Shown here piece after piece: positions 19,257 through 54,142 of a stretch of 64,000 nt of DNA. The DNA is taken from the IMG/VR virus record IMGVR_UViG_3300037805_000644, positions 62,001-126,000 of that record. One strand, given 5' to 3'. How positions within the stretch are numbered: the first letter of the stretch is position 1; every line of letters starts with the position of its first letter. The notes under the pieces were generated by a model, which did not search any database, had not been told where the DNA came from, and worked only from the letters and a program-made list of their open reading frames with translations. The translations under genes were made by a program, and so were the position numbers.

Positions 19257-20687
19257 CTACAGGAAGAACAGGTTTGAGGCATCCTCAGCCGCAATTCCCT
19301 TGGGTTCTTGTATGCCAAGGCGGTCCACCTCGACATAATAGCTTTGCCCGGTCACCGACTCAGGCATTCGGCTATCCAGGCGCAGGATGCTGGGTGCCAC
19401 ACGCACTCCGGTCGCAGGGCCTGATGCAAACCCTACCCGCCCACCAGCAGCACCCAACACCGTCTTGAGACGATAGCTGCCTGCATTTGCCCCTGTGGCG
19501 AACGTCAGCACCTCCCCCTCAGCAGCAAGGGCCCAGTCTTGACTGGAGTCCGTGATGTCGTCCCCGCTCACTGTGGCGGACCCTGAGAGCCCTGTGGGGC
19601 TTGTGGTGTACGCCCTGGCGGTACTGTCGTCCCCCCCAGGGAACACGATGCGCTCCACCACTCGATAGCGACCCAGTTCCCGGCGGTCTGTCGAGGCCAC
19701 TGTCCCCTCTTGACCCCCGGCATGGATGCCGTTTGGTCCCGAGGTGACCACCAGAGGTGCGGCTGCCGAGATGTTGGAGAAGTCCCGGTTCACGTCCTGG
19801 AACAAGCTCCGATCTGACAGGGTCTCCCCTTGAGTGCCGGATACGCTCTTGGCGCCGTGGCAATAACGCCGGAAATCCTCGTAGTAATACGAGTGCATGT
19901 CCCAGCTCAGGGTCCCTGCAAACAGCTCACCGAAAGTCTCCGTGAATTGATGCCGGTACTCATACAGGGTGTGGGCCGGCTTCAAAGCCCTCATGACAAT
20001 TCGGACGTTCTCCATCAGGATGAAAGGATCCTCAGGGAACCGCTCCAGCCCTGACCCTGCATCGAGGTAATTTGCGCTGACCTCAAAGCAAAACTGATCG
20101 TCGAGCCCCCAAGCCGAACCTGAGCCCAGCTTCCGGGCCTCGACGGCTTTCTCCAACACCGTGTAAGCGATATCCTGAACCAGCCCGGGGTTCTCACACC
20201 TCGCCAACCCCTGGGTCGCCCTACCAACCTCAGCCAGGGACTCCTCAATGGTCCCCTTGGTTGCCCCCTGCAAGAGGAACCGGACCATGCTCTGGAGGAA
20301 CTGACGGTAAGTCAGGTCGCCCTGGAGGTCGGGGTATCCATCGGTCTGGGCATCCGGGAACACGAGCTGGCCCAGCATTTGGAACAGGAACTCCGACCGG
20401 GTGTAATCGTACATCGTATCCGCCCAGACCTCCTGAGCGGTGATCTGGAATTCTGCGATCTGTTCAGCGGCGGCCTGGAACTGGAGGGTGTAAAAGGGCC
20501 CCGTCACCTGCGAGATGTAGTTGCTCGGCAGGAGCTGGAGGAACACCTTCATGATGTTGTCCACCTGGTCTCGGACTTGCTGCTTGTGCTCCTGGGACCC
20601 TTGGGCTTTCTGATCCGTATGGACAGGGGCAGGGTTCTGGGCTACGAGCCCAGGGAGGAGGTTCTTGTTGACGGGCTTGTCTGCCAT
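19257..20687 (-). CDS. Baseplate wedge protein, P2 gpI-like (476 aa)
   Basis: Follows baseplate J once the GNAT-like insert is ignored. LLQLLPSNY at the N-terminus and RIVMRALKPAHTLY match the gpI-type KPAH motif. Confidence 0.7.
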   Translation of the reverse strand: MADKPVNKNLLPGLVAQNPAPVHTDQKAQGSQEHKQQVRDQVDNIMKVFLQLLPSNYISQVTGPFYTLQFQAAAEQIAEFQITAQEVWADTMYDYTRSEFLFQMLGQLVFPDAQTDGYPDLQGDLTYRQFLQSMVRFLLQGATKGTIEESLAEVGRATQGLARCENPGLVQDIAYTVLEKAVEARKLGSGSAWGLDDQFCFEVSANYLDAGSGLERFPEDPFILMENVRIVMRALKPAHTLYEYRHQFTETFGELFAGTLSWDMHSYYYEDFRRYCHGAKSVSGTQGETLSDRSLFQDVNRDFSNISAAAPLVVTSGPNGIHAGGQEGTVASTDRRELGRYRVVERIVFPGGDDSTARAYTTSPTGLSGSATVSGDDITDSSQDWALAAEGEVLTFATGANAGSYRLKTVLGAAGGRVGFASGPATGVRVAPSILRLDSRMPESVTGQSYYVEVDRLGIQEPKGIAAEDASNLFFL

Positions 20688-20699
20688 CAGTTACGCCCC
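20684..20699. repeat. 16-bp direct repeat CCATCAGTTACGCCCC, copy 1 (GNAT-like stop and gpI-like start junction)
   Basis: Exact match to 21253-21268. The minus strand reads GGGGCGTAACTGATGG (Gly-Arg-Asn-stop overlapping ATG). Confidence 0.95.
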
Positions 20700-21256
20700 C
20701 ACACCAAGAAACCCTCATGGGGGTACCTGCGGCGAATCGAGTTCCAAACCCTAAAGGCGGCAGGCTTAGTGGGCTCCCCTGCACATACCCCAGGCCCAAT
20801 AGCCGCTCGGTGCTTGGTGGCCATCTGAATGATCTCTGCATAAAACAGATTGCCCAGACCTCTCCGCCTCAGCTCAACATCCAGCATGGTGTGCCCGATG
20901 AACCAAAGGTTCTGGATCTGGGGGTGCTTTGAGGTCAGGGTATCGAAATCTGTGCGGCACTGGCTTGTGGTGTAGGACGCCCGCCGCCGGCGAGGCAGCG
21001 GGGGGATGCCAGACCTCACCTGCTCCATCGCATGATCGTCTTTCTCCTGGGAGGTCATATGCAGATCGGTAGCATACACCCACCCCACTGCCCGCCGACC
21101 CTCCAAAATCTTCACTACCCCTCCCTTGGGGGAGTCCTTGCGGAATACCTTGAAGTCCCGATCCAACTCCTCCGCAATCTGAGCAACTACCTGGTCAAGT
21201 TCCGCGCCCGCTTGGCGCTGCAACCACTGCCCCGCAACCCGTGTGACTGAATCCAT
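20687..21256 (-). CDS. GNAT-fold acetyltransferase-like protein (189 aa) with a short N-terminal leader
   Basis: HTMLDVELRRRGLGNLFYAEII matches GNAT motif A (R/Q-x-x-G-x-G). It is followed by TKPAAFRVWNSI, resembling the motif B helix. TGATG coupling occurs at both ends. Confidence 0.6.
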   Translation of the reverse strand: MDSVTRVAGQWLQRQAGAELDQVVAQIAEELDRDFKVFRKDSPKGGVVKILEGRRAVGWVYATDLHMTSQEKDDHAMEQVRSGIPPLPRRRRASYTTSQCRTDFDTLTSKHPQIQNLWFIGHTMLDVELRRRGLGNLFYAEIIQMATKHRAAIGPGVCAGEPTKPAAFRVWNSIRRRYPHEGFLVWGRN

Positions 21257-21268
21257 CAGTTACGCCCC
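21253..21268. repeat. 16-bp direct repeat CCATCAGTTACGCCCC, copy 2 (baseplate J stop and GNAT-like start junction)
   Basis: Exact match to 20684-20699. Confidence 0.95.
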
Positions 21269-24200
21269 TGTACCCGAGCCAAGAAATCGGTGTCCTCGTC
21301 AAAAGTGAGGTCGATCTCACCAATCTCCAGGTATTCCGTGGGACCCGGCTCAATGTTCTTGACTCCCGCATCACCCTGCACCTGGTAAGTCACCGTGTAC
21401 TGGTGATCCAGAGGGGTGTCGTCCTTGGTCAGGGACACCAAGATCCGGTTGGCTGTGATCTCCCGACGTTTCTCGATGATCTCCGCCCCGGAGGCAAACG
21501 GGTAAGCCGCCTGGAGGGTGGCGTCGTCAGAAAAACCGGGGATCTCCAAACCCTGGGCACCGATGATGAAGGCAGAACCGGACCCGTTGAGCATGGGCAC
21601 CCCGTTGATGTTCGGAGCGATCACCTTGTTCTCCAGCAGATCCTCATCTGCGAAAACGCCCCGGAACTTGGTCTCCTCACCACCACTGTCGATGGTGGAT
21701 GCCTCCAGGGGGTTCTTGAGCAACCACACGTTGACGGCACCTGAGGTGGCGTTCCAGGTATCCACAGCAAACACGTCTGAGGACTGGGTGGTTGTGATGA
21801 ACTCCCGCACCACCAGGGCACCGTCTCCCTTGGACATCTTGGTGAGGGGGACGACGGGGTAAGCTACGCCGGACACGTTCTCGATGACCCCAAGAACATC
21901 TGCCTGTCGGACGGGCTCCCCAAGCACCAGTGCGCCAAAGTAGCGGTCCAGAGCCGTTCGGATAGCCCCATCCACGGTGTCCACGGACACCCTGCGTTGG
22001 TTGGCATTCTCCAAGACCACTGTCACCGTGAGGTCCACGGGCACGTTGACCGCCTCCTTGGCGACCACATCAGCGGTGATGTGGCGATCCGGGTTAATGG
22101 CGCTCTCCGTCAGGGACACCAGCGCATTGGTGGTGTACAAAACGGTGAAGTTCTCATCGTACTTGTAGCTGATGAGCAAGGTCTGCCCCTCAGAGATCGG
22201 TGAGCCCGAGGTCACCTGGATACCCAGAGGGGTCGCGGAGTCGCCGGTGATGATGGTGTACTCAGGGGTCAGTGAGGCGAAGGGGCCAACGTAAGTCGTC
22301 GCCCCGGTCTCATCCGTGACGACCACAGAGTAAGGGTTGGCCCCGAGGCGGTTAACATACTCAACGCCATCCAGGATCACATGCTGCTCACCGGTCACCT
22401 CAATGGGCGTCCCACTCGGGATGGTATCCCCGGCATCCGTCAGGGGTTCCGTCACCTGAACATAGTCCCCAGCTTCGGTCGAGCGGCCCAGCTCCAACGG
22501 GTCGCTGGCCTGGTACAGGTCGAAGATATCTTCGTCCAGCTCACCGCTGACCTCTCCAGTCATGTCCCCCACAGAGCGGACAGGCTGCCTAGCAAAGGTG
22601 TGCTTGTTGCTTGTCCGGTAACGGTAACTGCCCTTGACCACGTCCAGCAGGCCCAGGATTGCGGGGTCATTGAGGGCGGTGTCAAGCTGGATGACGTTGT
22701 AAGCCACCACGGTGGTGTTGGTCAGGTCAAAGGTGGCGCCCTTGGTCTCGTTGACCAGCTCAATGTCGAACTCAGGGTAATCCAGCATCTCAATGATGGG
22801 GTTGTCCTCAGAGAGGCTGGGGTCAACGGCCCGGAGTCTGAGATCCTTGGGGTCCCCAACCGGCTCGAACTGCACGCCCGTCTTACTCTCAAAGGAGAAA
22901 GCAAAACTGTCCGTGACTGTGCTCAGGTTCTCCCCTCTCAGCCAGATATCCACCTTGCCGCCCACATGGCGCCCGCTCTCGTTGCGGTCTCGCTGCATGA
23001 GGGGGTGGCCGGCGTCCACCACATTGACCTGCTCGACCCCAGGGACATCCACGGCATTCTTCACGTAACCCCGGAGAGTGCCAGAGTCCACCGAAGACAG
23101 GGCGTTCATGCCCCGGGCTGCCAGGTCTCGGTTCGACTCCTCAGTCAAGCCGCCACTGATAGCCGAGTCGTTGGTGACCTCGACGCCCACGGGAGCACCC
23201 GAGACGGTGCCGTTCTGGCCTGGGGCCAGGTTGCTGCCCAGCCCCACGTCCTCAGCCTGCACGAAGGCTGTGGCAGAGTAACGGCCGGTGATCGGGTTGA
23301 AGAAAGAACCTGCACCTGAGCTGGTGATAGATACGGAGCTGGTGAGGCGGTAACCCACACCACCCAGCACCACCCTTGTGCCGATGCCGAAGCTGAGGCT
23401 CGTGGTCGGGCGGGAGCGGGTGTAGATGGTCACAGATCCTCGGGCTCGGCGACCACTCCGCCGTGTCTTCCCGTAGTTGCTCGCCAGCTTTTCAAAGGTG
23501 TTGTCAATGAGCTGCTGAACCGAGCTGGTGCTCTCCAAGAAGAACGCCTGCTTGAGTGCGATCTTGTAGTCCGACTGCTCAACCGGAATGGACACCCCAG
23601 ACAGGCTGGGGTCGTCGATGGGGAGCAACGTGGCGAAGCTGCCGGCGCGATGCAAGAAATCGATGATGAACCGCTGGCGCTCCGCCTCCGTGGAGAAGGG
23701 GTCAATGAATGTGTCCCGCAATACAGAGCCGGGCTTCACGTCAATCTGAGGCTGAGCCCGGAAAATGCTAAGCACCGTGTCACGCACGATATTCTGGCGG
23801 CTCACCGCAGGGAATGTACCGACGTTGGGGACCAACTCCAGAGGGGAACCCGACAGCTCGGGGCTAAACGCGGTCTCGTACTCGGTGCCCTCGGTGAAGT
23901 AAACCGCCGTCACCACATAGTAAACGGGATCTGACTTGGGGATGGCGTTGAAGGCCGCGTTTGGGATGGCCGGGTTGGTGGGTGAGTTGAAGCTCGCCAG
24001 CCGGTCGTGGACGAAGCTGTACCTAGAAAGGCTCCGCACTGCCTCCACCGAGATGGTTGAGCGGACTCGGGTGGTGTTGTCGGGGATCTCCAGAGCCTGA
24101 TCGAAATCAGTCTGGAGGACCGTGTCGTCCTGGTCCTCCTGGGTGGCCTTGTAGACCATGAATAGGGGGTCCGCCGCAGGGGAGCCGTCGTTGAGGGTGG

Positions 24201-24768
24201 CCACGTTGGCATCCACCGTCAGCTCCGCCAGGGTGGTCAAGTCCTCGATCTGCTCACCCGAGATAACCAGGGAGGGGTTGATGCGGGAATAGCCCTCAGC
24301 CCCACCACCGGGCTGGGTTGAGGCATAGAAGTTGTACCCGATGACCTCAGAGGCATCGAGACCATCCACAGTGACCTTAATGGCCTCGTTGAACCGCTCA
24401 AGGAACACGCCGGTGGGCTCGTCGAGGGACACTCCAAGGTCACTGTCCTGCACAAGCCGGGCAGTGATGCGGCTCGGCTTTGAGACCGTGCCGTTGGAAA
24501 AGACCGCCTTGACCTGGATGTCGTTATCTCCAGCCAAGAGCTGGATCCCGTCAGGGAAAGCAGAGGGGTTGGGCACCACGAAAGTCGTGCCCTCAAAAGC
24601 GATCAGGTCTGGATCGGAGGTGAAAGCCGCGCCACGGACAGACACCTGCATGTCCACCGTGTCCGCGTCCATCTCCCCTGAGAAGTGCCGGGAATCAATA
24701 GTAGTCGAGAAGGTGTAATCCTCTCGGAGGACTGCATCAGGACCCTCAAACTTGGGCAGGGTGGGCAT
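21256..24768 (-). CDS. Baseplate J-like wedge protein (1170 aa) with N-terminal Ig/FN3-like extension
   Basis: Classic J series: RARGSVTIYT...VQAEDVGLGSNL...VTNDSAISGGLTEESNRDL...GTLRGY...VPGVEQVNVV...GGKVDIWL. Confidence 0.9.
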   Translation of the reverse strand: MPTLPKFEGPDAVLREDYTFSTTIDSRHFSGEMDADTVDMQVSVRGAAFTSDPDLIAFEGTTFVVPNPSAFPDGIQLLAGDNDIQVKAVFSNGTVSKPSRITARLVQDSDLGVSLDEPTGVFLERFNEAIKVTVDGLDASEVIGYNFYASTQPGGGAEGYSRINPSLVISGEQIEDLTTLAELTVDANVATLNDGSPAADPLFMVYKATQEDQDDTVLQTDFDQALEIPDNTTRVRSTISVEAVRSLSRYSFVHDRLASFNSPTNPAIPNAAFNAIPKSDPVYYVVTAVYFTEGTEYETAFSPELSGSPLELVPNVGTFPAVSRQNIVRDTVLSIFRAQPQIDVKPGSVLRDTFIDPFSTEAERQRFIIDFLHRAGSFATLLPIDDPSLSGVSIPVEQSDYKIALKQAFFLESTSSVQQLIDNTFEKLASNYGKTRRSGRRARGSVTIYTRSRPTTSLSFGIGTRVVLGGVGYRLTSSVSITSSGAGSFFNPITGRYSATAFVQAEDVGLGSNLAPGQNGTVSGAPVGVEVTNDSAISGGLTEESNRDLAARGMNALSSVDSGTLRGYVKNAVDVPGVEQVNVVDAGHPLMQRDRNESGRHVGGKVDIWLRGENLSTVTDSFAFSFESKTGVQFEPVGDPKDLRLRAVDPSLSEDNPIIEMLDYPEFDIELVNETKGATFDLTNTTVVAYNVIQLDTALNDPAILGLLDVVKGSYRYRTSNKHTFARQPVRSVGDMTGEVSGELDEDIFDLYQASDPLELGRSTEAGDYVQVTEPLTDAGDTIPSGTPIEVTGEQHVILDGVEYVNRLGANPYSVVVTDETGATTYVGPFASLTPEYTIITGDSATPLGIQVTSGSPISEGQTLLISYKYDENFTVLYTTNALVSLTESAINPDRHITADVVAKEAVNVPVDLTVTVVLENANQRRVSVDTVDGAIRTALDRYFGALVLGEPVRQADVLGVIENVSGVAYPVVPLTKMSKGDGALVVREFITTTQSSDVFAVDTWNATSGAVNVWLLKNPLEASTIDSGGEETKFRGVFADEDLLENKVIAPNINGVPMLNGSGSAFIIGAQGLEIPGFSDDATLQAAYPFASGAEIIEKRREITANRILVSLTKDDTPLDHQYTVTYQVQGDAGVKNIEPGPTEYLEIGEIDLTFDEDTDFLARVQGRN

Positions 24769-24771
24769 GGT

Positions 24772-25884
24772 CTATCGACCTCCGAGGAACAGGCCGTTCG
24801 AGCCCATCAGAGCGACGACCTCGGGAACCGTGAACACGGTGTTGAGTTGAATAGGTTCGGATGAGGCGTTCTGGACCCACACATCCACGAGGAACGTCGT
24901 CAGATCTTGCTCATGGGGCAGTACCTGGATGCTGAGCACCGCATACAGGCGCTCCTTGGGGCTGACCGGCTGTACCTCAGCCTGTGCCTTCTGGAGCCGC
25001 TGGTAACGGGTCAGTGCCCGCCGGATGTCATCCTGGAGGGCGGCGGCCACATTACCAATGGCCTTGCTCCCAATACGGGAGCGGATGGTGGTCCCGTACC
25101 AGTTGTGGTACGGGTTTGAGCCCCGATCCGTCAGAATCACCTTGAGGGCCGCCTGCTGGAGCAGATCCTCGTCGTCCACAAAGACGGGGTTCCCGTCCAC
25201 AGAGAACCGGATATCGTTCTCGACGTAAGTGGCGCGGCATCGAAGACACCGAGAGACCGGCACCGAGTAAGTCACCTTGATGGTGGGGTTGCTCCTAACC
25301 CTCGAAGTGAATTTGGGGGCCCTGTTGGTGATGGTGTCCGGTCGGATCTCCAGGTTCCAGGAGGGGTACAGGCGGCGTCCTCGGGCAGACCTTTGCCGGG
25401 TGTTGCCTGTGGCACCGAAACCCAGACTCTCAGCACCAGTGCCCGAGATCCTGACGAAACTATCGGGGCCCACCGTGTTGGTGTCCGAGATGAGCAGATG
25501 GCCGTTGATGTTCTCCGCCAGGGCGAGCTGGCTGGTTAGACCTTGCCGCATGAGCTTCTGAATGACCTGGTCAGCACCCCACCGGACCTTACCCGTGATG
25601 CCGAGGGAGGCCGTGAAAGACCCTGCGGGTGTCTCAATGGTGAGGGTGTCCTCACCTTGGGTGAGGGTGAACGGGCCGGAGTCGGTTGAGAAGATCTGGG
25701 CCACCGAGGAGAGCCCTGTCTGGGGGATCACCAGGCCCGGGTCATCATTGAGCATAACCCGCACGGTCCCCGCCGTCGCCACGGGCTGACGGGTCAAGAG
25801 CGTTCTGCGATCCGTGTCCAGGCGCACCACTTCCTCCACCGTCAGGTGAGGACACGCCCATCCCAGTTGAAAATCTTGGCTCAT
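24772..25884 (-). CDS. Baseplate wedge initiator, T4 gp25 / P2 gpW-like, with N-terminal extension (370 aa)
   Basis: The C-terminal DIRFSVDG...LLQQAALKVILTDRGSNPYHNWYGTTIRSRIG is gp25-like. The gene lies immediately upstream of baseplate J. Confidence 0.8.
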   Translation of the reverse strand: MSQDFQLGWACPHLTVEEVVRLDTDRRTLLTRQPVATAGTVRVMLNDDPGLVIPQTGLSSVAQIFSTDSGPFTLTQGEDTLTIETPAGSFTASLGITGKVRWGADQVIQKLMRQGLTSQLALAENINGHLLISDTNTVGPDSFVRISGTGAESLGFGATGNTRQRSARGRRLYPSWNLEIRPDTITNRAPKFTSRVRSNPTIKVTYSVPVSRCLRCRATYVENDIRFSVDGNPVFVDDEDLLQQAALKVILTDRGSNPYHNWYGTTIRSRIGSKAIGNVAAALQDDIRRALTRYQRLQKAQAEVQPVSPKERLYAVLSIQVLPHEQDLTTFLVDVWVQNASSEPIQLNTVFTVPEVVALMGSNGLFLGGR

Positions 25885-25931
25885 GCAGGTCTCCGGGGGG
25901 CCACCAAGCGCCGCTTCATTCTACCGAACCT

Positions 25932-25937
25932 TATAGG
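25932..25937 (-). promoter_or_regulatory. Candidate late-promoter element CCTATA (also 19247-19252, 61202-61207; variants at 1265-1270 and 29111-29116)
   Basis: An AT-rich hexamer recurring 27-58 nt upstream of minus-strand starts in five intergenic gaps of a GC-rich genome. Confidence 0.45.
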
Positions 25938-25952
25938 CTGCGAATCGGGCAA

Positions 25953-25964
25953 CTTTCCGGGTAA
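25953..25964 (+). promoter_or_regulatory. Candidate regulatory motif CTTTCCGGGTAA (exact copy on minus strand at 59965-59976; core also at 61759-61766 and 28311-28318)
   Basis: Exact 12-mer shared between two intergenic gaps. 59969-59980 and 61759-61770 also share CCGGAAAGGTTC exactly. Confidence 0.4.
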
Positions 25965-26012
25965 CGATCTGACGGCAGGTGGTAGTTAGGGTGAGACACA
26001 AGGAGATCCAGC

Positions 26013-26276
26013 ATGTACCGAGACGTTGAGGGTGTGGCAGAAGACTGGGGAACACGCGGGAGTGGGACCCCCTCCAAGAGGATCGCCGACGGGGTGTTCC
26101 AGATGGTCACCGACGCAGGAGCGCCCAACCTCACCACGGTGGAGGTGGAGACCCCGGAGGATGCCCTGGTCCTCATCATCGAAGCGAAAGTGTTCGAGTT
26201 GAAGTACCCCTTCGACGATGACGACATCCAAGACAAGATCAACGCCTTCCTCGACGGTGAGCCCGGGGACCGCTAG
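26013..26276 (+). CDS. Small acidic hypothetical protein (87 aa)
   Basis: AAGGAG RBS, ATG start; its stop overlaps the next GTG start (TAGTG). Confidence 0.75.
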   Translation: MYRDVEGVAEDWGTRGSGTPSKRIADGVFQMVTDAGAPNLTTVEVETPEDALVLIIEAKVFELKYPFDDDDIQDKINAFLDGEPGDR

Positions 26277-26545
26277 TGGGTCTGCAAGGCCGGGTTGCAG
26301 GCATCTGCACAGGTTGCGGGTCCCGGCCCGGTGATCCTCCGATCACTTGGGGCGGGGGTGGTGTATTCTGTGCCTCCTGCGTGGACCTCTTTGGGGGAGC
26401 CGATCTAGCCAGACAGCGGCAAAAACAGAAGCGGGAAAAAGCCTTGAAATGGAGATCCGAAGGGCTCTCTTACCGCAAGATTGGAGATAAGCTGGGGATC
26501 AGCCTCCAAGCCGCCGCCCAGCTCATCAAGCGAGCTGGCGGGTAA
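26276..26545 (+). CDS. Zinc-finger plus helix-turn-helix protein (89 aa)
   Basis: CTGC...CASC pairs followed by RSEGLSYRKIGDKLGISLQAAAQLIKR, a sigma70-region-4 or homeodomain-like HTH. Confidence 0.75.
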   Translation: MGLQGRVAGICTGCGSRPGDPPITWGGGGVFCASCVDLFGGADLARQRQKQKREKALKWRSEGLSYRKIGDKLGISLQAAAQLIKRAGG

Positions 26546-26559
26546 CTGACAGGAGAACC

Positions 26560-26964
26560 ATGGATCGCCGTACCTTACGAGATAAAGACCCCGACATCAA
26601 AGATGCAGCCCTTGCGGCGGCACTGGGTCGGGATGCGGCTGTCCTTGCGGTCGGCCCACCCCCCCAGGCAAGCCAGGACATCCCTTGGGAGGACACGGCC
26701 CGGCTGACCGACAACTTCATCGGCACCCTCCGTGGGCTGTTTGGTTTTGTGGGCGTCAAGATGCTTACCGAGGGGGAGGGCGGTGACCTCCTCATTGATC
26801 GGGTTGAGGGGATGCTCCAGGAGGCTTACCTGCTTGGGGTGAAAGCAGCACAGAACACCCGGCTCGATTATGACATCGCCCAGAGCAAGGCATCTACCGC
26901 CGGGATCTTGAAGGGCCTTCTCGGCAACATAGGCGAGGATTCTGAGGATGACGGAAACGATTGA
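26560..26964 (+). CDS. Hypothetical protein (134 aa)
   Basis: AGGAG RBS, ATG start, operon-like spacing. Confidence 0.7.
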   Translation: MDRRTLRDKDPDIKDAALAAALGRDAAVLAVGPPPQASQDIPWEDTARLTDNFIGTLRGLFGFVGVKMLTEGEGGDLLIDRVEGMLQEAYLLGVKAAQNTRLDYDIAQSKASTAGILKGLLGNIGEDSEDDGND

Positions 26965-27190
26965 TCGGAAACTCAATCAGATGATCCCGGGTGCCCGCGT
27001 GTTTGCCCGGGGTGATGCGGATGACCTCGGAACTGTCGTGGCTGGCAAGCACGGGGAGCCCTGGGTTATCTGGGATTCGGGGGAGCATGATGCTCTCACG
27101 GGGTGTCAGTGTGACATCGGGTGCCAGTGCTTCGGGGACGTTCAGACTTCTTTCGGGATCAAGGTGATCCCAACCTCGGAGGACCCATGA
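26948..27190 (+). CDS. Hypothetical Cys-containing protein (80 aa)
   Basis: GAGG before ATG. It overlaps both neighbours and contains GCQCDIGCQC. Confidence 0.6.
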   Translation: MTETIDRKLNQMIPGARVFARGDADDLGTVVAGKHGEPWVIWDSGEHDALTGCQCDIGCQCFGDVQTSFGIKVIPTSEDP

Positions 27191-27348
27191 CCGAGGCTTG
27201 GACATTCGCGTGGGCCTGTGGGGGTTACATCTCCACGCTGTGCGCTGATTTCGACACCCTTTTCATGGAGCTTGTCGCGCAATACGGAGCACCCGATAGC
27301 GTGACAGCCAGCACCGCCGCTATGCCTCAAAACGTGACCAAGGGCTGA
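27187..27348 (+). CDS. Small hypothetical protein (53 aa; MTEAWTFAWACGG...)
   Basis: ATGA overlap with the upstream stop and GGAGG RBS favour 27187 over the track's 27121 start. Confidence 0.55.
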   Translation: MTEAWTFAWACGGYISTLCADFDTLFMELVAQYGAPDSVTASTAAMPQNVTKG

Positions 27349-27355
27349 TCAGCCC
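27342..27355. repeat. Perfect 14-bp palindrome GGGCTGATCAGCCC formed by two abutting convergent stop codons
   Basis: TGA at 27346-27348 (+) directly abuts TGA at 27351-27349 (-). Both are preceded by GGC Gly codons. Confidence 0.85.
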
Positions 27356-28218
27356 AGCGGGATCTCTTCGGGTTCATCCTCGAATGAGAAATCCAAAAAC
27401 CCCACCTTGAAGCCGGAGCGGAACGCGAGAACTTTCTCCGGCCCTTCCATCTCAAACAACATGTCGTAAAAATCGTTGACCAAGCTCTGCACCGTCAGGC
27501 CCGGGTTGAAGCGTTCTGCATCCAGCACAGGTGTCGTATCTGAGGAGCCGCCGAAAGCCTGGGTGAGGACACGGTCCCGCTCCTGCTCAAGTTGCTCTCT
27601 CAGGTCCATCTGCTTGATGATGCGCCACTCGATGTCCTGGAGCTTGTGCTTGATGGACTGATTGGCCCAGTCCCGCATCTTCCGCATCGCCTTCGCCGTG
27701 GTGAGATCTTTCTGGGTGACTCGGCCGCCCAGCCGGGCTGGGTAATAGCGGGAGGTGTTGAGGTAGCCGCCCTCATAGCTCTGGTAACCCGTGCCCTGCG
27801 GGTCCTGCGCGGGGTTGTTGGGCTCCACACTCTTGGGGGCCACTACACCCCCGAACGGGTAAGTCTCGCCCACCCGGGCCTCCCCGCCGTCGCTCATGTC
27901 CATCACGGTGCTCTGGTCGGGCATCCAGAAAGGGCTGATGTCCAGGGGGTTGCCCCCGTTGGCGACATACGCCTGAACCAGCTTCTCCAGGGTGGACTTG
28001 GGGGTGACGCTCACCCCCATGCGCTCTTCGGTCACGTAATAAGAACCGTCGGGGTTTTGGGCCTGACGGTAAGCCACCGTGACAAACCCGATCCGCTCGA
28101 TCTCAGCGTTCATCACGTTAATGCGGCGGGACAGATCCCGCTTCTCCCGCAAGAGCCAGGAGCTGAACACCCGGAAATAACCGGAGGGAAAGAAACTCAT
28201 CTTGGAGAAAGAAGCCAT
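27349..28218 (-). CDS. Hypothetical virion-associated protein (289 aa) with coiled-coil segment
   Basis: In-strand ORF within the baseplate module; KHKLQDIEWRIIKQMDLREQLEQERD is heptad-like. Confidence 0.7.
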   Translation of the reverse strand: MASFSKMSFFPSGYFRVFSSWLLREKRDLSRRINVMNAEIERIGFVTVAYRQAQNPDGSYYVTEERMGVSVTPKSTLEKLVQAYVANGGNPLDISPFWMPDQSTVMDMSDGGEARVGETYPFGGVVAPKSVEPNNPAQDPQGTGYQSYEGGYLNTSRYYPARLGGRVTQKDLTTAKAMRKMRDWANQSIKHKLQDIEWRIIKQMDLREQLEQERDRVLTQAFGGSSDTTPVLDAERFNPGLTVQSLVNDFYDMLFEMEGPEKVLAFRSGFKVGFLDFSFEDEPEEIPLG

Positions 28219-28226
28219 GGCTCACT

Positions 28227-29084
28227 CTACCGAGAGGGGGTGCCTCGGAGCACAGGGAGCAGGCTCGACCGGAGTTCGGGGTGCTGATGGGCCAGGCGGG
28301 TCAGGTCTTCCCGGAAAGCTTTCTTGAAGTCAGGGCTCCAGTCCACCTCACCCCTCTGCAAGGATTTGGCGGCTGCGGGCACCTCTCCGGGGTTGATCAC
28401 AGGCATGTCGGGGCGGGCCGGGGCCCAAGAAGGGACGGACTTGGTGATGAGGTCGGCATTTGACGAAATCTCGGCGATACCTGCCTCAACCGTCCCAAAG
28501 GACGACTCCAAGACCGACTTCACATCCTCAGGCTTCCAGGGGAACTGCCCCGGGATCCCCTCAACCGTGAACTTCTGGAGCATTGCACGGGTTTTGCTGG
28601 GGGTGTAACCCGAGAGGGATCCTGACCCCGCGTTCCCTTTGTTCCTCTTGAACTTCCCCACGGTGAGGACATTCAGAACTTTGAGCAAATCCTCACCACG
28701 AACCCGAGCCATGTAACCGCCTACCTGAGCAGACTTCCCGCCAGCCAACACGGCAGCGGACCAACGGTGGTGGCCGTCCATGATGTAATTGTCGGCAGAG
28801 ATCAGAGCACCGAGGTCACCACCCACCTGGCCTTTCTTCAACATGAAAAGCGCCATCCCGAGGGACTTCGCCAAGACCATCGTGGTCTGGGAGGGCTTGA
28901 GTCGGCTCGCAGGGATGGTTTTCTTGGAGACCTGGATCTTGTCGGTGTCGCCGTTGCCCGACTCGACCATTTCCCTGGCGATTGCGGGATCAACCTGGCT
29001 GAGTTGATTCGCCTTTTCCATCTGCTGCTCGTGAATACTGCGAGCTTTCGCCCACATACGCCTCATCTGGTCAACTTGGTTCAT
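28227..29084 (-). CDS. ParB/Sulfiredoxin-fold protein (285 aa) with a C-terminal helical tag
   Basis: IPASRLKPSQ...LISADNYIMDGHHRWSAA is the ParB/Srx signature. AAGGAGG precedes ATG 29084, preferred over the track's 29129. Confidence 0.8.
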   Translation of the reverse strand: MNQVDQMRRMWAKARSIHEQQMEKANQLSQVDPAIAREMVESGNGDTDKIQVSKKTIPASRLKPSQTTMVLAKSLGMALFMLKKGQVGGDLGALISADNYIMDGHHRWSAAVLAGGKSAQVGGYMARVRGEDLLKVLNVLTVGKFKRNKGNAGSGSLSGYTPSKTRAMLQKFTVEGIPGQFPWKPEDVKSVLESSFGTVEAGIAEISSNADLITKSVPSWAPARPDMPVINPGEVPAAAKSLQRGEVDWSPDFKKAFREDLTRLAHQHPELRSSLLPVLRGTPSR

Positions 29085-29125
29085 GTGACCCTCCTTTACT
29101 AGAGAAACTGCCATAGACAGAAAAT

Positions 29126-32100
29126 TCAAAGGACATCGGGCTCATCATCCGGTGGGGGATTGTTGGGGGCTTCCAGATTCTCCAAGCCAAACAGTGGCCC
29201 TGGGGATGTGACACTGGCGTCCTGTTTGGGGTCACTGTCTTGCCCCATTGCCACTTGCAGCAACTCGATCAGAAAAGTCGGAGCACCACCCGCCAACACC
29301 GCCACCCCTCCTCCATAGGCGGCAAGCTCACGCGCTTCATCGAGCATGGTCTGCGTGACGGGTGCGCCCACCGCGGGGTCAAGCGCGGCGGCCTGCTCGA
29401 CAGCGATGCGCTCCGCCTGCTCGCGCTTCCCTCCTCCATAGGCGAGGGGGCTGTCTGAGGGCTTGTTGTCCGCCGTGATGAACTGCCGGGTGATGTCGTC
29501 AGTGCCCTGGCCCACCAGCAGCAACCCCGAGCATTGGGGGATCCCCACGGTGAACCCAAGGATGCTCTGAATCAGGGAGTTCAACCTACGGATCAGGTTC
29601 TGCAACTCGACGATGCGGTCCTCCACGAACTCGATGTACTGGACAATGGCGTCCGTCACCGACTTGATGGACTCCGCCAAGGCATCAAGCCATTGCTGGA
29701 GGGTTTCAAAGAACCCGTCCAGAGCAGGGAAACTGTCGAGGAAACGGATAGCGATCCACTCCCCGTCTTGGGGGTGGCGGAGTCCCGCAGCAGCGGCCAC
29801 ACCCAACACCAAGGCCGACTGGGAGTACAAGAGGCCACCCTCCCACTCCCGGAACATGGTCCGCAGGTACCGGGCGCCGAACGCGTCCTGAACATTAACG
29901 GGGACCACCCCCGTTTGGGCTGCCGCCCTCATCTTGTCCGCCCCGAAATAGAACACTGGAGACAGGTCCGCCGAGCCGACTTTCCTCTCCTGGGCCGCCA
30001 AGGCGTCCATGTAGGACAGGACCTTGGTGGGCACCAGGATGGAGCCGTCTGCCTGGAGGTACTTCTCGTAAAACATGCGGAGGGAAGGTGGGGAGTCTGC
30101 AAGAACTTGGAGCGCCGAACTCGCTGGAATCTGGCCCTTCACCTCCCAGTCAGCCACGTCTGCCGGGGTGACCTCAATGAAGTCGCCTTTGCGGCCTCGA
30201 ATAACATCGGGGATCCCTGCCGACATCAGCTTGCCCACCAGGGCCTCAGGCACCTCCATGCTGTAAGGGTTGGGGGCGAAACCGATGCTTCGCCAGGCCC
30301 CGAGCTGGGGGGCTGGCTCTGTGGACAAGTTCGGGAACTCAGGGGGCTTATCCACTGAGGCCGCCAGATCGTTGTTCCGTTGCTTCAAAGCCAGCGTTTC
30401 AGTGTCCAGCTCAGTGCTCAGGGCAGCAAGCAGCAAGAAATCAGCAGAGGCATCGTTCATGCTGGGAAGGTCGGAGATCCGCCTCATCTCCTTAATGGCT
30501 CCGGTCTCCCCAACCCCGAGGAGCAAAGCCTGCACGCTGGCTTCGTTTCGCATCTCCAGAGTGTTCTGGGCGATGAACTCATGAAGCTCGGGACGGGCAC
30601 CAAGTTTGTCGCACAGCTCCTTGGCAAAACCCCGCACCCGGGTCAGCAGCTCCTGGCGGAACCTCTGTGGGTTTTGACCCTTGGTCTCGATGAACTGCTT
30701 GAACCCTCCGGGGAACATCTGCTCCAGAAGGCCCTTGTAAGGCTCCAAACCCGTGGCCAGGAGTGCCACCCCGGGGATGAGCTTCTTGTGCTCCTTAGCC
30801 AGCTCAATAGCCTCCTCTGGCCACCCCTCCACCTCGTCGATGAGGGGGAGATCGGAACGGCTCAGGACCAGCACCATCAGGGCAATCGACACAGCGTCGA
30901 GGAAATCTCCGGTGTTGGAGTTAGGGATGGTGGCCTTGAATGCGGGACTCCAGGCTGACCTCTTCGCCTGCCCCTTTTGGGGGATACGGAACAGCTCCCC
31001 CGGGTTGTTTCCCAGGTCCCGGACCTTAGAGAAATCCAGGGCATAACTCTTGCTGATCGTCCGATCTCCGAGTGGGGTCGCCAAGGTGTACTCTGCATTA
31101 TCGGTGGAGGCGATGCGGACATAGTAAGTGCTCAGCCGGCCGAGGTCCCGGACAGTGACCTGGCCGGTCAGGTTGTCCACTTTGAACTCAGCATCATGAG
31201 GCAGGTCATCGAAATTGAGGACCAGGCTGTACTCCTGCTTGACCCAGGCACTGATCTGCCCGGGGTCCACCGCAAAGGTCCGTTGGAGCAGGTAAGGGTT
31301 GTCGATGTCCTCACCCTCTCTGAGCAGATCGAGATCGATGACCTCCCCCGAGGCGCGGCTCTTCAACCCATAAACGGCGGTGTGGCCGTCCCGGAACTGG
31401 TTTGGCCCCTCAACAACACTGTTCCAGGAGTGCTCATCCAGGGGACCGTCAAGCATATCGGACCCACCGTACAGGATGTAAGGCTGACCCTTCCTGTCGA
31501 GGACCTTACCGGCCTCCCGTGAGGACCGGCGTGCCGTGTCACCACCCTCGGGCTCTCTCTTCTTGGCGTCGTTCTCGGGCCGGTTGAAGGCAAGGGGGAT
31601 CCCCTCCTCCCGTGTGCCGACGGTCACCAGGAATCCCTGAGGCCCCACCGGAGGGAACGGGTTGAACGGGCTCGTCAGGTTGGTCGGCTGGACTTTCCAG
31701 GTGATCTTCACCTTCTCAGGTGGGGTGTCCTCAAAACGCACCAGGTTCTCGAACGAGTCAAAAACATCACCGTTGGCCTGGGTCCCAAACTGGATCCCCG
31801 TGACGATGGGCACCGGGGGTGTGCCTGAGGGGTTGAAGCTCTGATTGAACAGGTCCAGGAGTTGTTCAACGAACTGCACCAGCCGGGAGATCCCACTGTA
31901 GTCTACCGAGAGATAAAAGAAAGCCCCGAGCACGGAGGCGTTGCCTGAGATGTCGGGTCGGGTGGGGTCGGTCTTGTCGGTGAGGCGGGCGATCATCCGC
32001 CGCTCGTACTCCGAGTAACCACCCCGGAGATCCTGATAGGGGCTCTCCAAGAGAGCCCAATCACCCGTGATGTAGATCCCCAAGTTTTGGAGATCTGCCA

Positions 32101-32314
32101 GCAAAGTGCTGACCTGGTCGATGATCGCCTGGACAAGGGCAGCAATGGGATCAAGGGACCCCACTGCAAAGGCTTTGAGGAGCTGGAGGGCGGACAAGGC
32201 GATGTCCAAAAACTCCAGCAAGAACTCTGCGACGCTGTTGATCGACTCCCGGGTGTCCTCCAGGAAATCAGGCAGCTCGAAACTGACTGTCCCCCACTCT
32301 CCGAAATCAGACAT
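29126..32314 (-). CDS. Large hypothetical virion-associated protein (1062 aa; MSDFGEW...) with amphipathic helical termini
   Basis: TGATG coupling to the upstream 78-aa gene and AGGAGG-like RBS support ATG 32314 rather than 32380. Confidence 0.75.
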   Translation of the reverse strand: MSDFGEWGTVSFELPDFLEDTRESINSVAEFLLEFLDIALSALQLLKAFAVGSLDPIAALVQAIIDQVSTLLADLQNLGIYITGDWALLESPYQDLRGGYSEYERRMIARLTDKTDPTRPDISGNASVLGAFFYLSVDYSGISRLVQFVEQLLDLFNQSFNPSGTPPVPIVTGIQFGTQANGDVFDSFENLVRFEDTPPEKVKITWKVQPTNLTSPFNPFPPVGPQGFLVTVGTREEGIPLAFNRPENDAKKREPEGGDTARRSSREAGKVLDRKGQPYILYGGSDMLDGPLDEHSWNSVVEGPNQFRDGHTAVYGLKSRASGEVIDLDLLREGEDIDNPYLLQRTFAVDPGQISAWVKQEYSLVLNFDDLPHDAEFKVDNLTGQVTVRDLGRLSTYYVRIASTDNAEYTLATPLGDRTISKSYALDFSKVRDLGNNPGELFRIPQKGQAKRSAWSPAFKATIPNSNTGDFLDAVSIALMVLVLSRSDLPLIDEVEGWPEEAIELAKEHKKLIPGVALLATGLEPYKGLLEQMFPGGFKQFIETKGQNPQRFRQELLTRVRGFAKELCDKLGARPELHEFIAQNTLEMRNEASVQALLLGVGETGAIKEMRRISDLPSMNDASADFLLLAALSTELDTETLALKQRNNDLAASVDKPPEFPNLSTEPAPQLGAWRSIGFAPNPYSMEVPEALVGKLMSAGIPDVIRGRKGDFIEVTPADVADWEVKGQIPASSALQVLADSPPSLRMFYEKYLQADGSILVPTKVLSYMDALAAQERKVGSADLSPVFYFGADKMRAAAQTGVVPVNVQDAFGARYLRTMFREWEGGLLYSQSALVLGVAAAAGLRHPQDGEWIAIRFLDSFPALDGFFETLQQWLDALAESIKSVTDAIVQYIEFVEDRIVELQNLIRRLNSLIQSILGFTVGIPQCSGLLLVGQGTDDITRQFITADNKPSDSPLAYGGGKREQAERIAVEQAAALDPAVGAPVTQTMLDEARELAAYGGGVAVLAGGAPTFLIELLQVAMGQDSDPKQDASVTSPGPLFGLENLEAPNNPPPDDEPDVL
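29306..29321. repeat. 16-bp direct repeat CCCTCCTCCATAGGCG, copy 1 (encodes AYGGG)
   Basis: Exact match to 29429-29444, 123 bp (41 codons) away. Confidence 0.9.
29429..29444. repeat. 16-bp direct repeat CCCTCCTCCATAGGCG, copy 2
   Basis: Exact match to 29306-29321. Confidence 0.9.
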
Positions 32315-32550
32315 CAGGAACCTCCACCGTGCTTGATGAGGGCGAGTTTCTGCAACGCCTCCGCCTTCTTGCCCTCCCACTCTGCAAGCTGCTGCTGGAG
32401 GATGCTCCGCATGGCCAACAGAGCCTGAGCCTGCTCATCGGCGAAAGCCGGGCGGATCTGCTTGTTGCTTCCGGCGGGAGACCAGGTGCCTACGTCTCTG
32501 CCGGTCTCGGCCAGCAACTCACCAGCTTCTTTGGGGGTCAAGGGCTTCAT
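32314..32550 (-). CDS. Small coiled-coil hypothetical protein (78 aa)
   Basis: ATGA overlap with the giant gene's stop and TGATG overlap with the next start. Confidence 0.75.
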   Translation of the reverse strand: MKPLTPKEAGELLAETGRDVGTWSPAGSNKQIRPAFADEQAQALLAMRSILQQQLAEWEGKKAEALQKLALIKHGGGS

Positions 32551-53368: not shown

Positions 53369-54142
53369 TCAGTTCCTCGATGACCCGTCAGGGTTCACCA
53401 ACTCCTCTGCGGCACCCCTGATCCTGTCTGTGCGGGCCACAGTCTCGTCAGGGTTCACAGAGTCAATGGTGCCGTCCAGGTTCCGCACACCAAACACCTC
53501 ACCCCGCCCTGAAACACTGGGCTGCCGGTTCGGGGGGTTGTAGGGCATCGTGCGAAGGCGCAGGATCTCATGGCTGATGGTGAACTCGGAGGAGAGGTCA
53601 AACATGAAAGGCTTCTCCGCAGACTCCTCCACGTTAAACGTGTTGAACCACCCGAAATAGATGCCGCCGTCGAAGGTGATCTTGATGATGCCCTGGAAAG
53701 CGATCTGACCGTTCTGATCGTACACCGACCCGTTGTTGTGGAACAGGGCCATCATGTCGAGGTATTTGTCGTAAGCAATGGTTTCCCGACGAGTACCCCC
53801 CGTGTCGACCCCCCCACCTGTGACATTGCTCAGCCCCGTGTAAAGACGTTTGAAGCCTCCGGTGACCATCTGGAAGCTCACCGTTCGGGCACCATCACCC
53901 CAGTGCTGCTCAACCCACCCACCCTTAGTCTGGATCCGCTCGATCTGCTTGGAGTAACTAAACGAGATCTGGGAGGGGTTGACGTGCAGAACCATCTTGA
54001 CCCCTTCGGGCAAGATGGAGGTCTCCAGATCTGGCGCCAGGATGTCAAACACCACGGGCCTTGTTCCCAGGTTGGGATCAAACTCATCGTCTGGGCTGCG
54101 AAACGCAGATTTGAACACCGGGATGGGGGCTCGGTTGGCCAT
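53369..54142 (-). CDS. Tail-tube initiator-like baseplate protein, paralogue 1 (257 aa)
   Basis: LHVNPSQISFSY...EQHWGDG...IKITFDGGIYFGWFNTFNVEESAEKPF is a tube-fold baseplate pattern. Confidence 0.7.
   Translation of the reverse strand: MANRAPIPVFKSAFRSPDDEFDPNLGTRPVVFDILAPDLETSILPEGVKMVLHVNPSQISFSYSKQIERIQTKGGWVEQHWGDGARTVSFQMVTGGFKRLYTGLSNVTGGGVDTGGTRRETIAYDKYLDMMALFHNNGSVYDQNGQIAFQGIIKITFDGGIYFGWFNTFNVEESAEKPFMFDLSSEFTISHEILRLRTMPYNPPNRQPSVSGRGEVFGVRNLDGTIDSVNPDETVARTDRIRGAAEELVNPDGSSRN

What the first reader, a model, noticed from the sequence alone, without database searches (positions are those of the whole stretch)
20687..29084. Two enzyme-like passengers share a terminal T-R-[VL]-A-x-Q peptide beside a K/R-x-A site: candidate virion-cargo tag
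Seen: the GNAT-like protein begins MDSVTRVAGQWLQRQA-G (21256-21209). The ParB/Srx-like protein ends ...DFKKA-FREDLTRLAHQHPELRSSLLPVLRG (~28322-28236). DSVTRVAGQ aligns with EDLTRLAHQ. Each tag lies outside the catalytic fold and is separated from it by RQA or KKA. Known: T4 internal proteins use a short capsid-targeting sequence removed by the prohead protease, and packaged enzymes such as T4 Alt are injected to modify the host. From memory, not checked, LxRLAxxxPELRxxLLPLL-like and RVAxxWL-like tails recur on unrelated proteins in large uncultured phages. Inference: a portable packaging tag that works at either terminus and loads an acetyltransferase and a ParB/Srx enzyme into the head for delivery at infection.
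Basis: inference. Interest (0 to 1): 0.8.

Follow-up and report, generated by a model that had tools for sequence, protein, structure and literature searches.

The report
Portable terminal peptide tag of huge phages
The tail of the ParB-like protein is one copy of a widespread, unannotated 25-residue peptide that huge phages attach to the ends of many unrelated accessory proteins, probably as a shared address label, but the neighbouring acetyltransferase-like protein does not carry it.

Summary
Their resemblance (T-R-[VL]-A-x-Q) is at chance level. It ranks 52nd of 1860 terminal pairs in this window, and the GNAT-like N-terminus scores -0.4 bits against a profile of the tag.

The ParB/Srx-like tail is real. 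It is a helix-Pro-helix module with consensus LR-x3-IRLAH-x2-P-x-LR-x2-LLPLLK. Among close ParB-like homologs it sits at the C-terminus, at the N-terminus, at both, or is missing. A profile of it finds 3763 protein clusters in 1.84 billion, on unrelated domains and on charged, probably disordered, proteins with 2-6 copies. Half of the copies are terminal, against 7% expected.

A related 485-kb phage genome has exactly 11 copies, 10 directly after the start Met. Codons differ at conserved residues, so selection acts on the peptide. Flanks show K-x-A-[SA] on both sides. No Pfam family, solved structure or searched paper describes it, and it is almost absent from cellular genomes.

Both enzyme-like genes are lineage-specific insertions in a baseplate operon. 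Virion loading is the best inference but is untested. Only one copy was found in about 135 kb of this phage lineage.

The parts
28242..28316 (-). Tag core, residues F272-G296 of the 300-aa ORF (FREDLTRLAHQHPELRSSLLPVLRG). A helix-Pro-helix copy of the LR-x3-IRLAH-x2-P-x-LR-x2-LLPLLK module.
   Evidence: Profile hit of 48.8 bits, E 3e-14, the only hit in the six-frame window. AF2 helices 269-282 and 284-295 with pLDDT 77-84, after a 10-residue coil. DNA read.
28317..28325 (-). K-K-A junction between the ParB/Srx-like core and the tag.
   Evidence: Logo of 419 tags: upstream K(-4) 40%, A(-2) 36%, S(-1) 39%; downstream K(+1) 49%, A(+3) 44%, A(+4) 34%. The register in the window copy is shifted by one or two residues. 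A role as a cleavage site is inference only.
28227..29129 (-). ParB/Srx-fold protein (300 aa from TTG; 285 aa from the ATG at 29084) with an invariant DGHHRW motif. It is the carrier of the tag.
   Evidence: 216 homologs. Invariant D118 G119 H120 H121 R122 W123. AF2 pLDDT 92. ParB/Srx matches. No homolog in the syntenic 485-kb relative.
20687..21256 (-). GNAT-like orphan protein (189 aa), inserted between the baseplate-J gene and the conserved 476-aa gene. No recognisable tag.
   Evidence: Only itself in 5.8 billion clusters. GNAT by ESM Atlas. RRRGLGN at residue 130. Five relatives have J and the 476-aa gene adjacent.
21209..21256 (-). Not a member of the tag family.
   Evidence: -0.4 bits against the tag profile. 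No recurrence anywhere. The AF2 single-sequence model is unusable, pLDDT 36.6.
21256..24768 (-). Baseplate J-like protein (1170 aa).
   Evidence: Pfam Baseplate_J 7.4e-15. 42-45% identical homologs in relatives.
24772..25884 (-). gp25-like sheath-initiator / baseplate wedge protein (370 aa).
   Evidence: Pfam Sheath_initiator 4.1e-6, below its cut-off. PHROG baseplate wedge families.
27349..28218 (-). Conserved 289-aa protein directly downstream of the ParB-like gene. The slot upstream of its homologs holds other tagged genes in relatives.
   Evidence: Homologs at LR745208 268846-269523, L045 1382-2029 and L035 2783-3601. Tagged genes at L045 627-1313 and L035 1420-2762.
29126..32380 (-). 1084-aa conserved structural-module protein. 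Its stop overlaps the TTG start of the ParB-like ORF.

Best explanation
Shown: the last 30 or so residues of the ParB/Srx-like protein are one copy of a widespread, unannotated 25-27-residue helix-Pro-helix peptide. Huge phages of this lineage fuse it, through a short K-x-A-[SA] junction, to unrelated accessory proteins and to charged low-complexity proteins. It sits mostly at the N-terminus, less often at the C-terminus or between domains. Selection acts on the peptide rather than the DNA, and its position relative to the cargo is free. Inferred: it is an address label that docks many clients onto one common phage-encoded partner. The most likely partner is the assembling virion (the capsid interior, or possibly the tail lumen). 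On that reading, tagged enzymes such as this ParB-like putative nuclease/NTPase are made with the late structural genes, loaded, and delivered with the DNA. Multi-tag charged proteins would act as multivalent scaffolds or fillers. The K-x-A-[SA] junctions may be sites where a maturation protease removes the tag. The GNAT-like neighbour is a separate orphan passenger without this tag. Whether it is packaged is unknown.
For: Mobility within one family: of 120 ParB-like homologs, 18 have the tag at the C-end, 5 at the N-end, 1 at both, and the rest lack it or carry a variant.
Breadth: 3763 clusters at E<=1e-3 and 259 at E<=1e-10. Of the 149 best carriers, 116 have a tag within 12 aa of the N-end and 59 within 8 aa of the C-end. 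Half of their tags are terminal against 7% expected.
Viral loci: 88 of 126 tags follow a Met directly.
Whole genome LR745208: 11 tags at 38-49 bits, the next best at 7 bits, and 10 of 11 at the N-terminus.
Peptide-level selection: only 45% identical codons at conserved residues.
Genome-specific signatures: 72% identity within genomes against 68% between, p<0.0005. All five tags of L034 have K in place of the near-invariant R.
Cargo types match domains described in injected polyvalent proteins: ART-PolyVal, ParB-like, GNAT, RelA_SpoT, 2H phosphoesterase. Carriers also include pentapeptide and RNA ligase domains (PMC5512222).
Tagged genes recur inside the tail/baseplate operon, including the same slot as here.
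The tag is nearly confined to viral contigs: 62 viral loci against 4 MAG contigs among 185,579 species genomes.
Against: There is no direct evidence for virion location, a partner or cleavage.
Tagged genes are not clearly enriched near structural genes. About 30% of tag loci lie near them, against the 20-27% of a genome that the structural module occupies. ParB-like homologs lie among replication and RNA-metabolism genes in other phages.
Only one tag was found in about 135 kb of this phage lineage, so a multi-client system is not shown for this genome.
K- and A-rich linkers could produce the flank pattern without any protease.
No cultured phage carries the tag, so no proteome exists.
Confidence: 0.45

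Rival explanations
1. The tag is a docking peptide for a partner outside the virion. It could gather clients into an intracellular phage factory or condensate, with multi-tag charged proteins as sticker-and-spacer scaffolds, or bind a conserved host protein.
For: Carriers with 2-6 tags are separated by K/E/D-rich linkers. Most tagged genes in LR745208 and the ParB-like homologs in L063-L066 lie outside structural modules. The peptide is strongly conserved across thousands of clusters.
Against: Cargo domains resemble those described for injected polyvalent proteins. Tagged genes are repeatedly inserted into baseplate operons. Genome-specific tag signatures fit a phage-encoded partner better than a host one.
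Confidence: 0.3
2. The peptide is only a solitary LRV/HEAT-like helical hairpin that caps or stabilises proteins, or mediates self-association. It carries no address function.
For: Faint sub-threshold similarity to LRV_2 (E 0.098) and to DUF6193. In P0236 a tag abuts genuine LRV repeats.
Against: It is gained, lost and moved between termini among 60-65% identical orthologs. It is separated from the core by a coil. Its strong terminal bias and its presence on disordered proteins argue against a folding role.
Confidence: 0.1
3. One reading: the GNAT-like N-terminus and the ParB-like C-terminus carry the same cargo tag, each followed or preceded by a K/R-x-A cleavage site.
For: Six residues of the GNAT N-terminus match profile positions 7-12. 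A post hoc half-pattern occurs only at these two sites. A GNAT domain is tagged in a relative, P0123. GNATs occur in injected polyvalent proteins.
Against: Profile score of -0.4 bits. The second half of the tag (P-x-LR-x2-LLPLL) is missing. Tag scores in a whole genome are sharply bimodal, with no half-tags. The 9-mer similarity ranks 52nd of 1860. The peptide recurs nowhere.
Confidence: 0.07
4. The recurrence is a DNA-level artefact: a mobile or regulatory repeat at gene boundaries that happens to be translated.
For: It sits at gene ends, and tags within one genome look alike.
Against: Synonymous codons differ freely at conserved residues. The reading frame is always the same. The tag also occurs inside long ORFs. 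Conservation is at amino-acid level across 3763 clusters.
Confidence: 0.02

Closest known systems
T4 capsid targeting sequence (internal proteins IPI-III, Alt) and the P1 Dar proteins
   Same: A short terminal peptide on unrelated, non-structural proteins. The cargo includes host-modifying enzymes. Alt-family genes sit with baseplate genes, and P1 DdrB carries a ParB-like domain and is packaged (PMC5512222).
   Different: The T4 sequence is about 10 residues, strictly N-terminal, and removed at L/I-x-E (my own knowledge). This tag is about 25 residues, helix-Pro-helix, works at either end or internally, can be multi-copy, and has no sequence similarity. Packaging is not shown.
Encapsulin cargo-loading peptides
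   Same: A conserved short terminal peptide, joined by a flexible linker, that marks diverse cargo for one shell. Some cargoes carry several copies (my own knowledge).
   Different: A different motif and a different host system. Binding to an HK97-fold shell has not been tested here.
P22 scaffolding protein C-terminal helix-turn-helix coat-binding domain
   Same: A small basic two-helix hairpin at a terminus that docks onto a capsid interior (my own knowledge).
   Different: It occurs on a single scaffold protein, not on dozens of clients. There is no sequence relation.
Bacterial microcompartment encapsulation peptides and CsoS2-type scaffolds
   Same: Amphipathic helices at the N- or C-terminus with poorly conserved linkers. 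Disordered multi-motif scaffolds (my own knowledge).
   Different: A cellular organelle and a different motif.
Polyvalent proteins of phages and conjugative elements (Iyer et al. 2017)
   Same: The same repertoire of effector domains. Multi-tag proteins such as P0123 (GNAT plus five tags) and the L018 864-aa protein (ParB-like plus three tags) look like polyvalent proteins with tags between domains.
   Different: In these phages most effectors are separate small proteins, each with its own tag. The paper's text has no hit for 'head-targeting', 'encapsidat' or 'N-terminal helical', and its 'packaged' passages concern other signals.
LRV / HEAT-like repeats (PF01816, PF25591)
   Same: A similar helix-P-helix rhythm with leucines. 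There is a sub-threshold LRV_2 hit.
   Different: A single unit, terminal, below every Pfam cut-off.

Membership tests
Terminal tag family defined here (LR-x3-IRLAH-x2-P-x-LR-x2-LLPLLK) | Significant score against the profile built from ParB-family tags (A2) | tested here: met
   ParB-like tail 48.8-53.9 bits.
Terminal tag family defined here | The same profile applied to the GNAT-like N-terminus | tested here: not met
   -0.4 bits; only profile positions 7-12 align.
ParB/Srx superfamily | ParB/Srx alpha+beta fold | tested here: met
   AFDB clusters E 1.6e-13, TM 0.59/0.69 over residues 47-267. PDB ParB-N, Noc and Srx at Z 4.3-5.0.
ParB/Srx superfamily | Conserved active-site arginine motif | tested here: met
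   D118 G119 H120 H121 R122 W123 are invariant in 37 sequences.
ParB/Srx superfamily | Match to a curated ParB sequence model | tested here: not met
   No Pfam ParB model matched any of 37 members at E<=1. The only hit is PHROG 2859, of unknown function.
DdrB-like ParB of polyvalent proteins | Sequence membership in the DdrB-like clade | tested here: inconclusive
   No Pfam hit. There are weak tblastn hits to large F116-like phage proteins annotated as structural protein or methyltransferase.
GNAT acetyltransferases | GNAT fold | tested here: inconclusive
   ESM Atlas feature score 0.94 to GNAT clusters, TM 0.45-0.52. The AF2 single-sequence model failed. Weak PDB hit to YjdJ, E 0.75.
GNAT acetyltransferases | Motif A, [QR]-x-x-G-x-[GA] | tested here: met
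   RRRGLGN at residue 130.
GNAT acetyltransferases | Match to a Pfam GNAT model | tested here: not met
   No hit at E<=0.1.
T4-type capsid targeting sequence | N-terminal position, and removal by the prohead protease at its consensus site | not testable with these tools
   The window copy is C-terminal. K-x-A-[SA] flanks exist, but no protease or cleavage data.
Virion-packaged cargo (any system) | Presence of the protein in purified particles | not testable with these tools
   No cultured phage carries the tag.

The most novel reading that the evidence does not exclude
Huge phages of this lineage use one position-independent, roughly 25-residue peptide as a general cargo-loading signal. It fills the virion with a changeable set of counter-defence and takeover enzymes and with multi-tag disordered scaffolds, in the way encapsulin loading peptides work. 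K-x-A-[SA] junctions would be cut on maturation. If so, any protein could be directed into these capsids by adding the tag.
Probability: 0.35. Interest if true: 0.85.

Novelty: new variant of a known kind. Interest (0 to 1): 0.7.

Why it matters
Which proteins huge phages carry into the cell, and how those proteins are chosen, is largely unknown for uncultured lineages. A sequence-recognisable address label would let the injected or co-localised proteome be read straight from metagenomes. At least 3763 clusters are already flagged. The label would point to new anti-defence effectors and could give a simple handle for loading foreign proteins. Even if the partner is not the capsid, one peptide shared by about 2% of a phage's genes defines a previously unnoticed interaction hub.

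Tried and rejected
- Pfam and PHROG scans of both proteins and of most window proteins gave almost nothing.
- The AF2 single-sequence model of the GNAT-like protein was unusable, pLDDT 36.6. I therefore could not see whether its N-terminal helix packs into the fold.
- The model output gives no contacts, so packing of the ParB tail onto its core could not be read. I relied on family comparison and on the aligned ranges instead.
- Literature searches by concept and by peptide strings found no description of the tag.
- The ESM Atlas search with a two-tag mini-protein gave only weak leads.
- The PDB sequence search with the tag profile gave only chance hits.
- Pfam finds no family for the tag.
- The upstream regions of the 11 tagged genes of LR745208 show no shared promoter by eye.
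- A second tag variant was sought in the window, its flanks and LR745208, and not found.
- Walking the genome outward with eight look-ups found no further tag.
- The idea that tagged genes are enriched in structural modules was considered and not upheld.
- The DNA-repeat explanation was rejected on codon evidence.
Full report
**Setting**

The window is a block of genes on the minus strand (61% G+C) that encodes the tail and baseplate of a contractile-tailed huge phage.
- It holds a Baseplate_J protein (21256-24768) and a gp25-like sheath initiator (24772-25884).
- It also holds a hub/lysozyme-like 798-aa protein, fibre-like proteins, and giant ORFs of 3755, 2108 and 1731 aa.
- Its proteins lie on metagenomic contigs of 222,939 to 240,846 bp.
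- It is syntenic, at 25-64% protein identity, with LR745208.1, an uncultured 485,034-bp phage.

**The observation**

Both peptides are present as described.
- The GNAT-like ORF (20687-21256, 189 aa) starts with an ATG that overlaps the TGA of the baseplate-J gene.

The fold labels are reasonable.
- The ParB-like model has pLDDT 92. It matches ParB/sulfiredoxin clusters at E 1.6e-13 over residues 47-267, and solved ParB-N, Noc and Srx structures weakly.
- DGHHRW is invariant in the family.
- The GNAT label rests on ESM Atlas features and structure and on an RRRGLGN motif.
- Neither protein reaches a Pfam model.

**Is the shared motif more than chance? No.**
- Among all pairs of terminal segments of 31 window proteins, the 9-mer DSVTRVAGQ/EDLTRLAHQ scores 21 and ranks 52nd of 1860.
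- A profile built from the tails of ParB-like homologs finds only the ParB tail in the six-frame window, at 48.8 bits.
- The same profile gives the GNAT N-terminus -0.4 bits, and only six positions align.
- The GNAT protein is an orphan. A search with its first 40 residues, limited to proteins of 104-330 aa, found no other protein sharing even a 5-residue word.
- A half-pattern that fits both peptides occurs only twice in the window, against 0.1 expected. I wrote it after seeing both peptides, so I give it little weight.

**What the ParB tail is**

Aligning homologs showed that the tail is a module in its own right. Of the 120 homologs listed:
- 18 have it at the C-terminus;
- 5 have it at the N-terminus;
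- 1 has it at both ends;
- about 20 carry a variant with a three-residue insertion;
- the rest lack it, or have other extensions.

Homologs only 60-65% identical to the window protein differ in all these ways. In the model the tag forms two helices (269-282 and 284-295) after a 10-residue coil. The best fold matches end at residue 265-267. The tag is therefore not part of the catalytic fold.

**How widespread it is**

A 29-position profile searched against 1.84 billion representative proteins found 3763 proteins at E<=1e-3 and 259 at E<=1e-10. Among the 149 best carriers:
- each has 2-6 copies;
- 116 have a copy within 12 residues of the N-terminus;
- 59 have a copy within 8 residues of the C-terminus;
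- half of all their copies are terminal, against 7% expected from uniform placement.

Many carriers are short K/E/D-rich proteins with a tag at each end. Others carry unrelated domains: WGR, RelA_SpoT, pentapeptide repeats, zinc ribbons, ART-PolyVal, DUF2958, DUF5710, RNA ligase, 2H phosphoesterase and GNAT.

A strict pattern scan gave 62 loci in IMG/VR, on contigs up to 485 kb and often several per contig. The same scan gave only four MAG contigs among 185,579 species genomes. In the viral loci, 88 of 126 distinct tags follow a Met directly. Most of the rest are explained by alternative start codons or lie inside multi-tag proteins. Tagged genes often stand in tandem.

**A whole-genome test**

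I fetched LR745208.1 whole and scanned it in six frames.
- It has exactly 11 tags at 38-49 bits, and the next best score is 7 bits.
- Ten tags are at the very N-terminus, and one is internal.
- At conserved residues only 45% of codons are identical between copies. Conservation is therefore at the peptide level, which rules out a DNA repeat.
- Tags within a genome are slightly but significantly more alike than between genomes: 72% against 68%, permutation p<0.0005.
- In L034 all five tags carry K in place of the near-invariant R. This fits co-evolution with one partner, although spread by recombination within a genome would look the same.

**Flanks**

Across 419 tags the residues before the tag are K(-4) 40%, A(-2) 36% and S(-1) 39%. 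Those after it are K(+1) 49%, A(+3) 44% and A(+4) 34%. It could be a protease site, or only a linker and helix-cap preference. Nothing here decides between the two.

**The two genes as passengers**

In LR745208 and in four IMG/VR relatives the baseplate-J gene and the 476-aa gene are adjacent, so the GNAT-like gene is an insertion. LR745208 has no ParB-like gene at all.

In L045 and L035 the slot just upstream of the homolog of the 289-aa gene is occupied by other, unrelated genes carrying N-terminal tags. Other tagged genes sit elsewhere in tail modules (L004, L010, L023, L034, L041, L047, L049). However, ParB-like homologs in other phages lie among RNA- and DNA-metabolism genes. Most tags of LR745208 are also far from structural genes. 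Enrichment near structural genes is therefore not demonstrated.

**Mechanism**

What is shown is a portable, position-independent, peptide-level-conserved terminal module on many unrelated phage proteins. The rest is inference.

The best reading is a shared address label for one phage-encoded partner.

I favour virion loading, with confidence 0.45, for three reasons.
- The cargo repertoire mirrors that of injected polyvalent proteins and of the P1 Dar system, which includes a packaged ParB-like protein (PMC5512222).
- Tagged genes are repeatedly inserted in late baseplate operons, as the Alt-family genes are in T4-like phages.
- Multi-tag proteins with domains between the tags look like polyvalent proteins.

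A non-virion hub, such as a factory, a condensate or a host target, remains a serious rival at 0.3.

In the window's own lineage I found a single tag in about 135 kb. That stretch is the window plus eight walked loci, covering 27,924-163,124 of a 222,939-bp sister contig. A multi-client system is thus shown for relatives, not for this genome.

**Comparison with what is known**

No Pfam family, solved structure or searched paper describes the peptide. In logic it resembles the T4 capsid targeting sequence, encapsulin loading peptides, the P22 scaffold helix-turn-helix and microcompartment encapsulation peptides. It differs from all of them in sequence, length, freedom of position and multiplicity. 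There is a faint, sub-threshold likeness to LRV repeats.

**Verdict**

The recollection behind it is correct, and it points to a real, widespread and apparently undescribed tag. Its function is plausible but unproven.

Noticed in passing
window 26013-27190 (+): A cassette of four small plus-strand ORFs, one HTH-like (26276-26545), sits inside the minus-strand baseplate operon between the gp25-like gene and the 289-aa gene. LR745208 has only a 510-bp gap at that place.
   Followed up: partly
ParB-like homologs P0020, P0024-P0026, P0028, P0034, P0037, P0046-P0051, P0059, P0064, P0070, P0094: A second tag variant with a three-residue insertion (LIRLASxLPKGSxERRxLLxxL) also occurs at the N- and/or C-terminus. 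It was not found in the window, its flanks or LR745208.
   Followed up: partly
ParB-like homologs such as P0042, P0052, P0057 and P0023, P0029, P0035, P0043: Two further recurrent N-terminal extension types are seen (RDLEIRIAHLERKAR-like, and MDIERVNGVLVKAIGQFQ-like). They may be alternative labels in other lineages.
   Followed up: no
P0122, P0126, P0133, P0141, P0145, P0151, P0185, P0239: Multi-tag charged proteins share other short motifs (AGCEKLPEGPMRDNCEKKK; DEPYMKGxFTQQE; AMEHSSPEALKKYLKDHPNADKSKHTV). Their meaning is unknown.
   Followed up: no
P0123 (1780 aa): It has an N-terminal Pfam GNAT domain (residues 33-93) followed by five tags and long charged stretches, so it looks like a polyvalent protein. 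Its longest contig is 52,763 bp, the same length as that of the ParB-like homolog P0043, so the two may share a contig.
   Followed up: partly
L034 (IMG/VR 3300013131_000094): All five tags have K instead of the near-invariant R of IRLA. This is a coordinated, genome-specific change.
   Followed up: partly
window 53369-54142 (-), N-terminus: PVFKSAFRS resembles the PDFKKAFRE junction that precedes the ParB tag. The score of 30 is among the top five of 1860 terminal pairs. No tag follows it.
   Followed up: no
window 32547-43814, 9734-16060, 46821-52016 (-): Giant ORFs of 3755, 2108 and 1731 aa have no Pfam match where scanned (the 3755-aa ORF was not scanned), yet all three are conserved in LR745208 at 30-49% identity.
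   Followed up: no
L063/L064 8311-13583; L065 10862-13507 and 16593-18320: Intein-containing genes (AAA, Hint, dCTP deaminase-like) neighbour ParB-like homologs in other huge phages.
   Followed up: no
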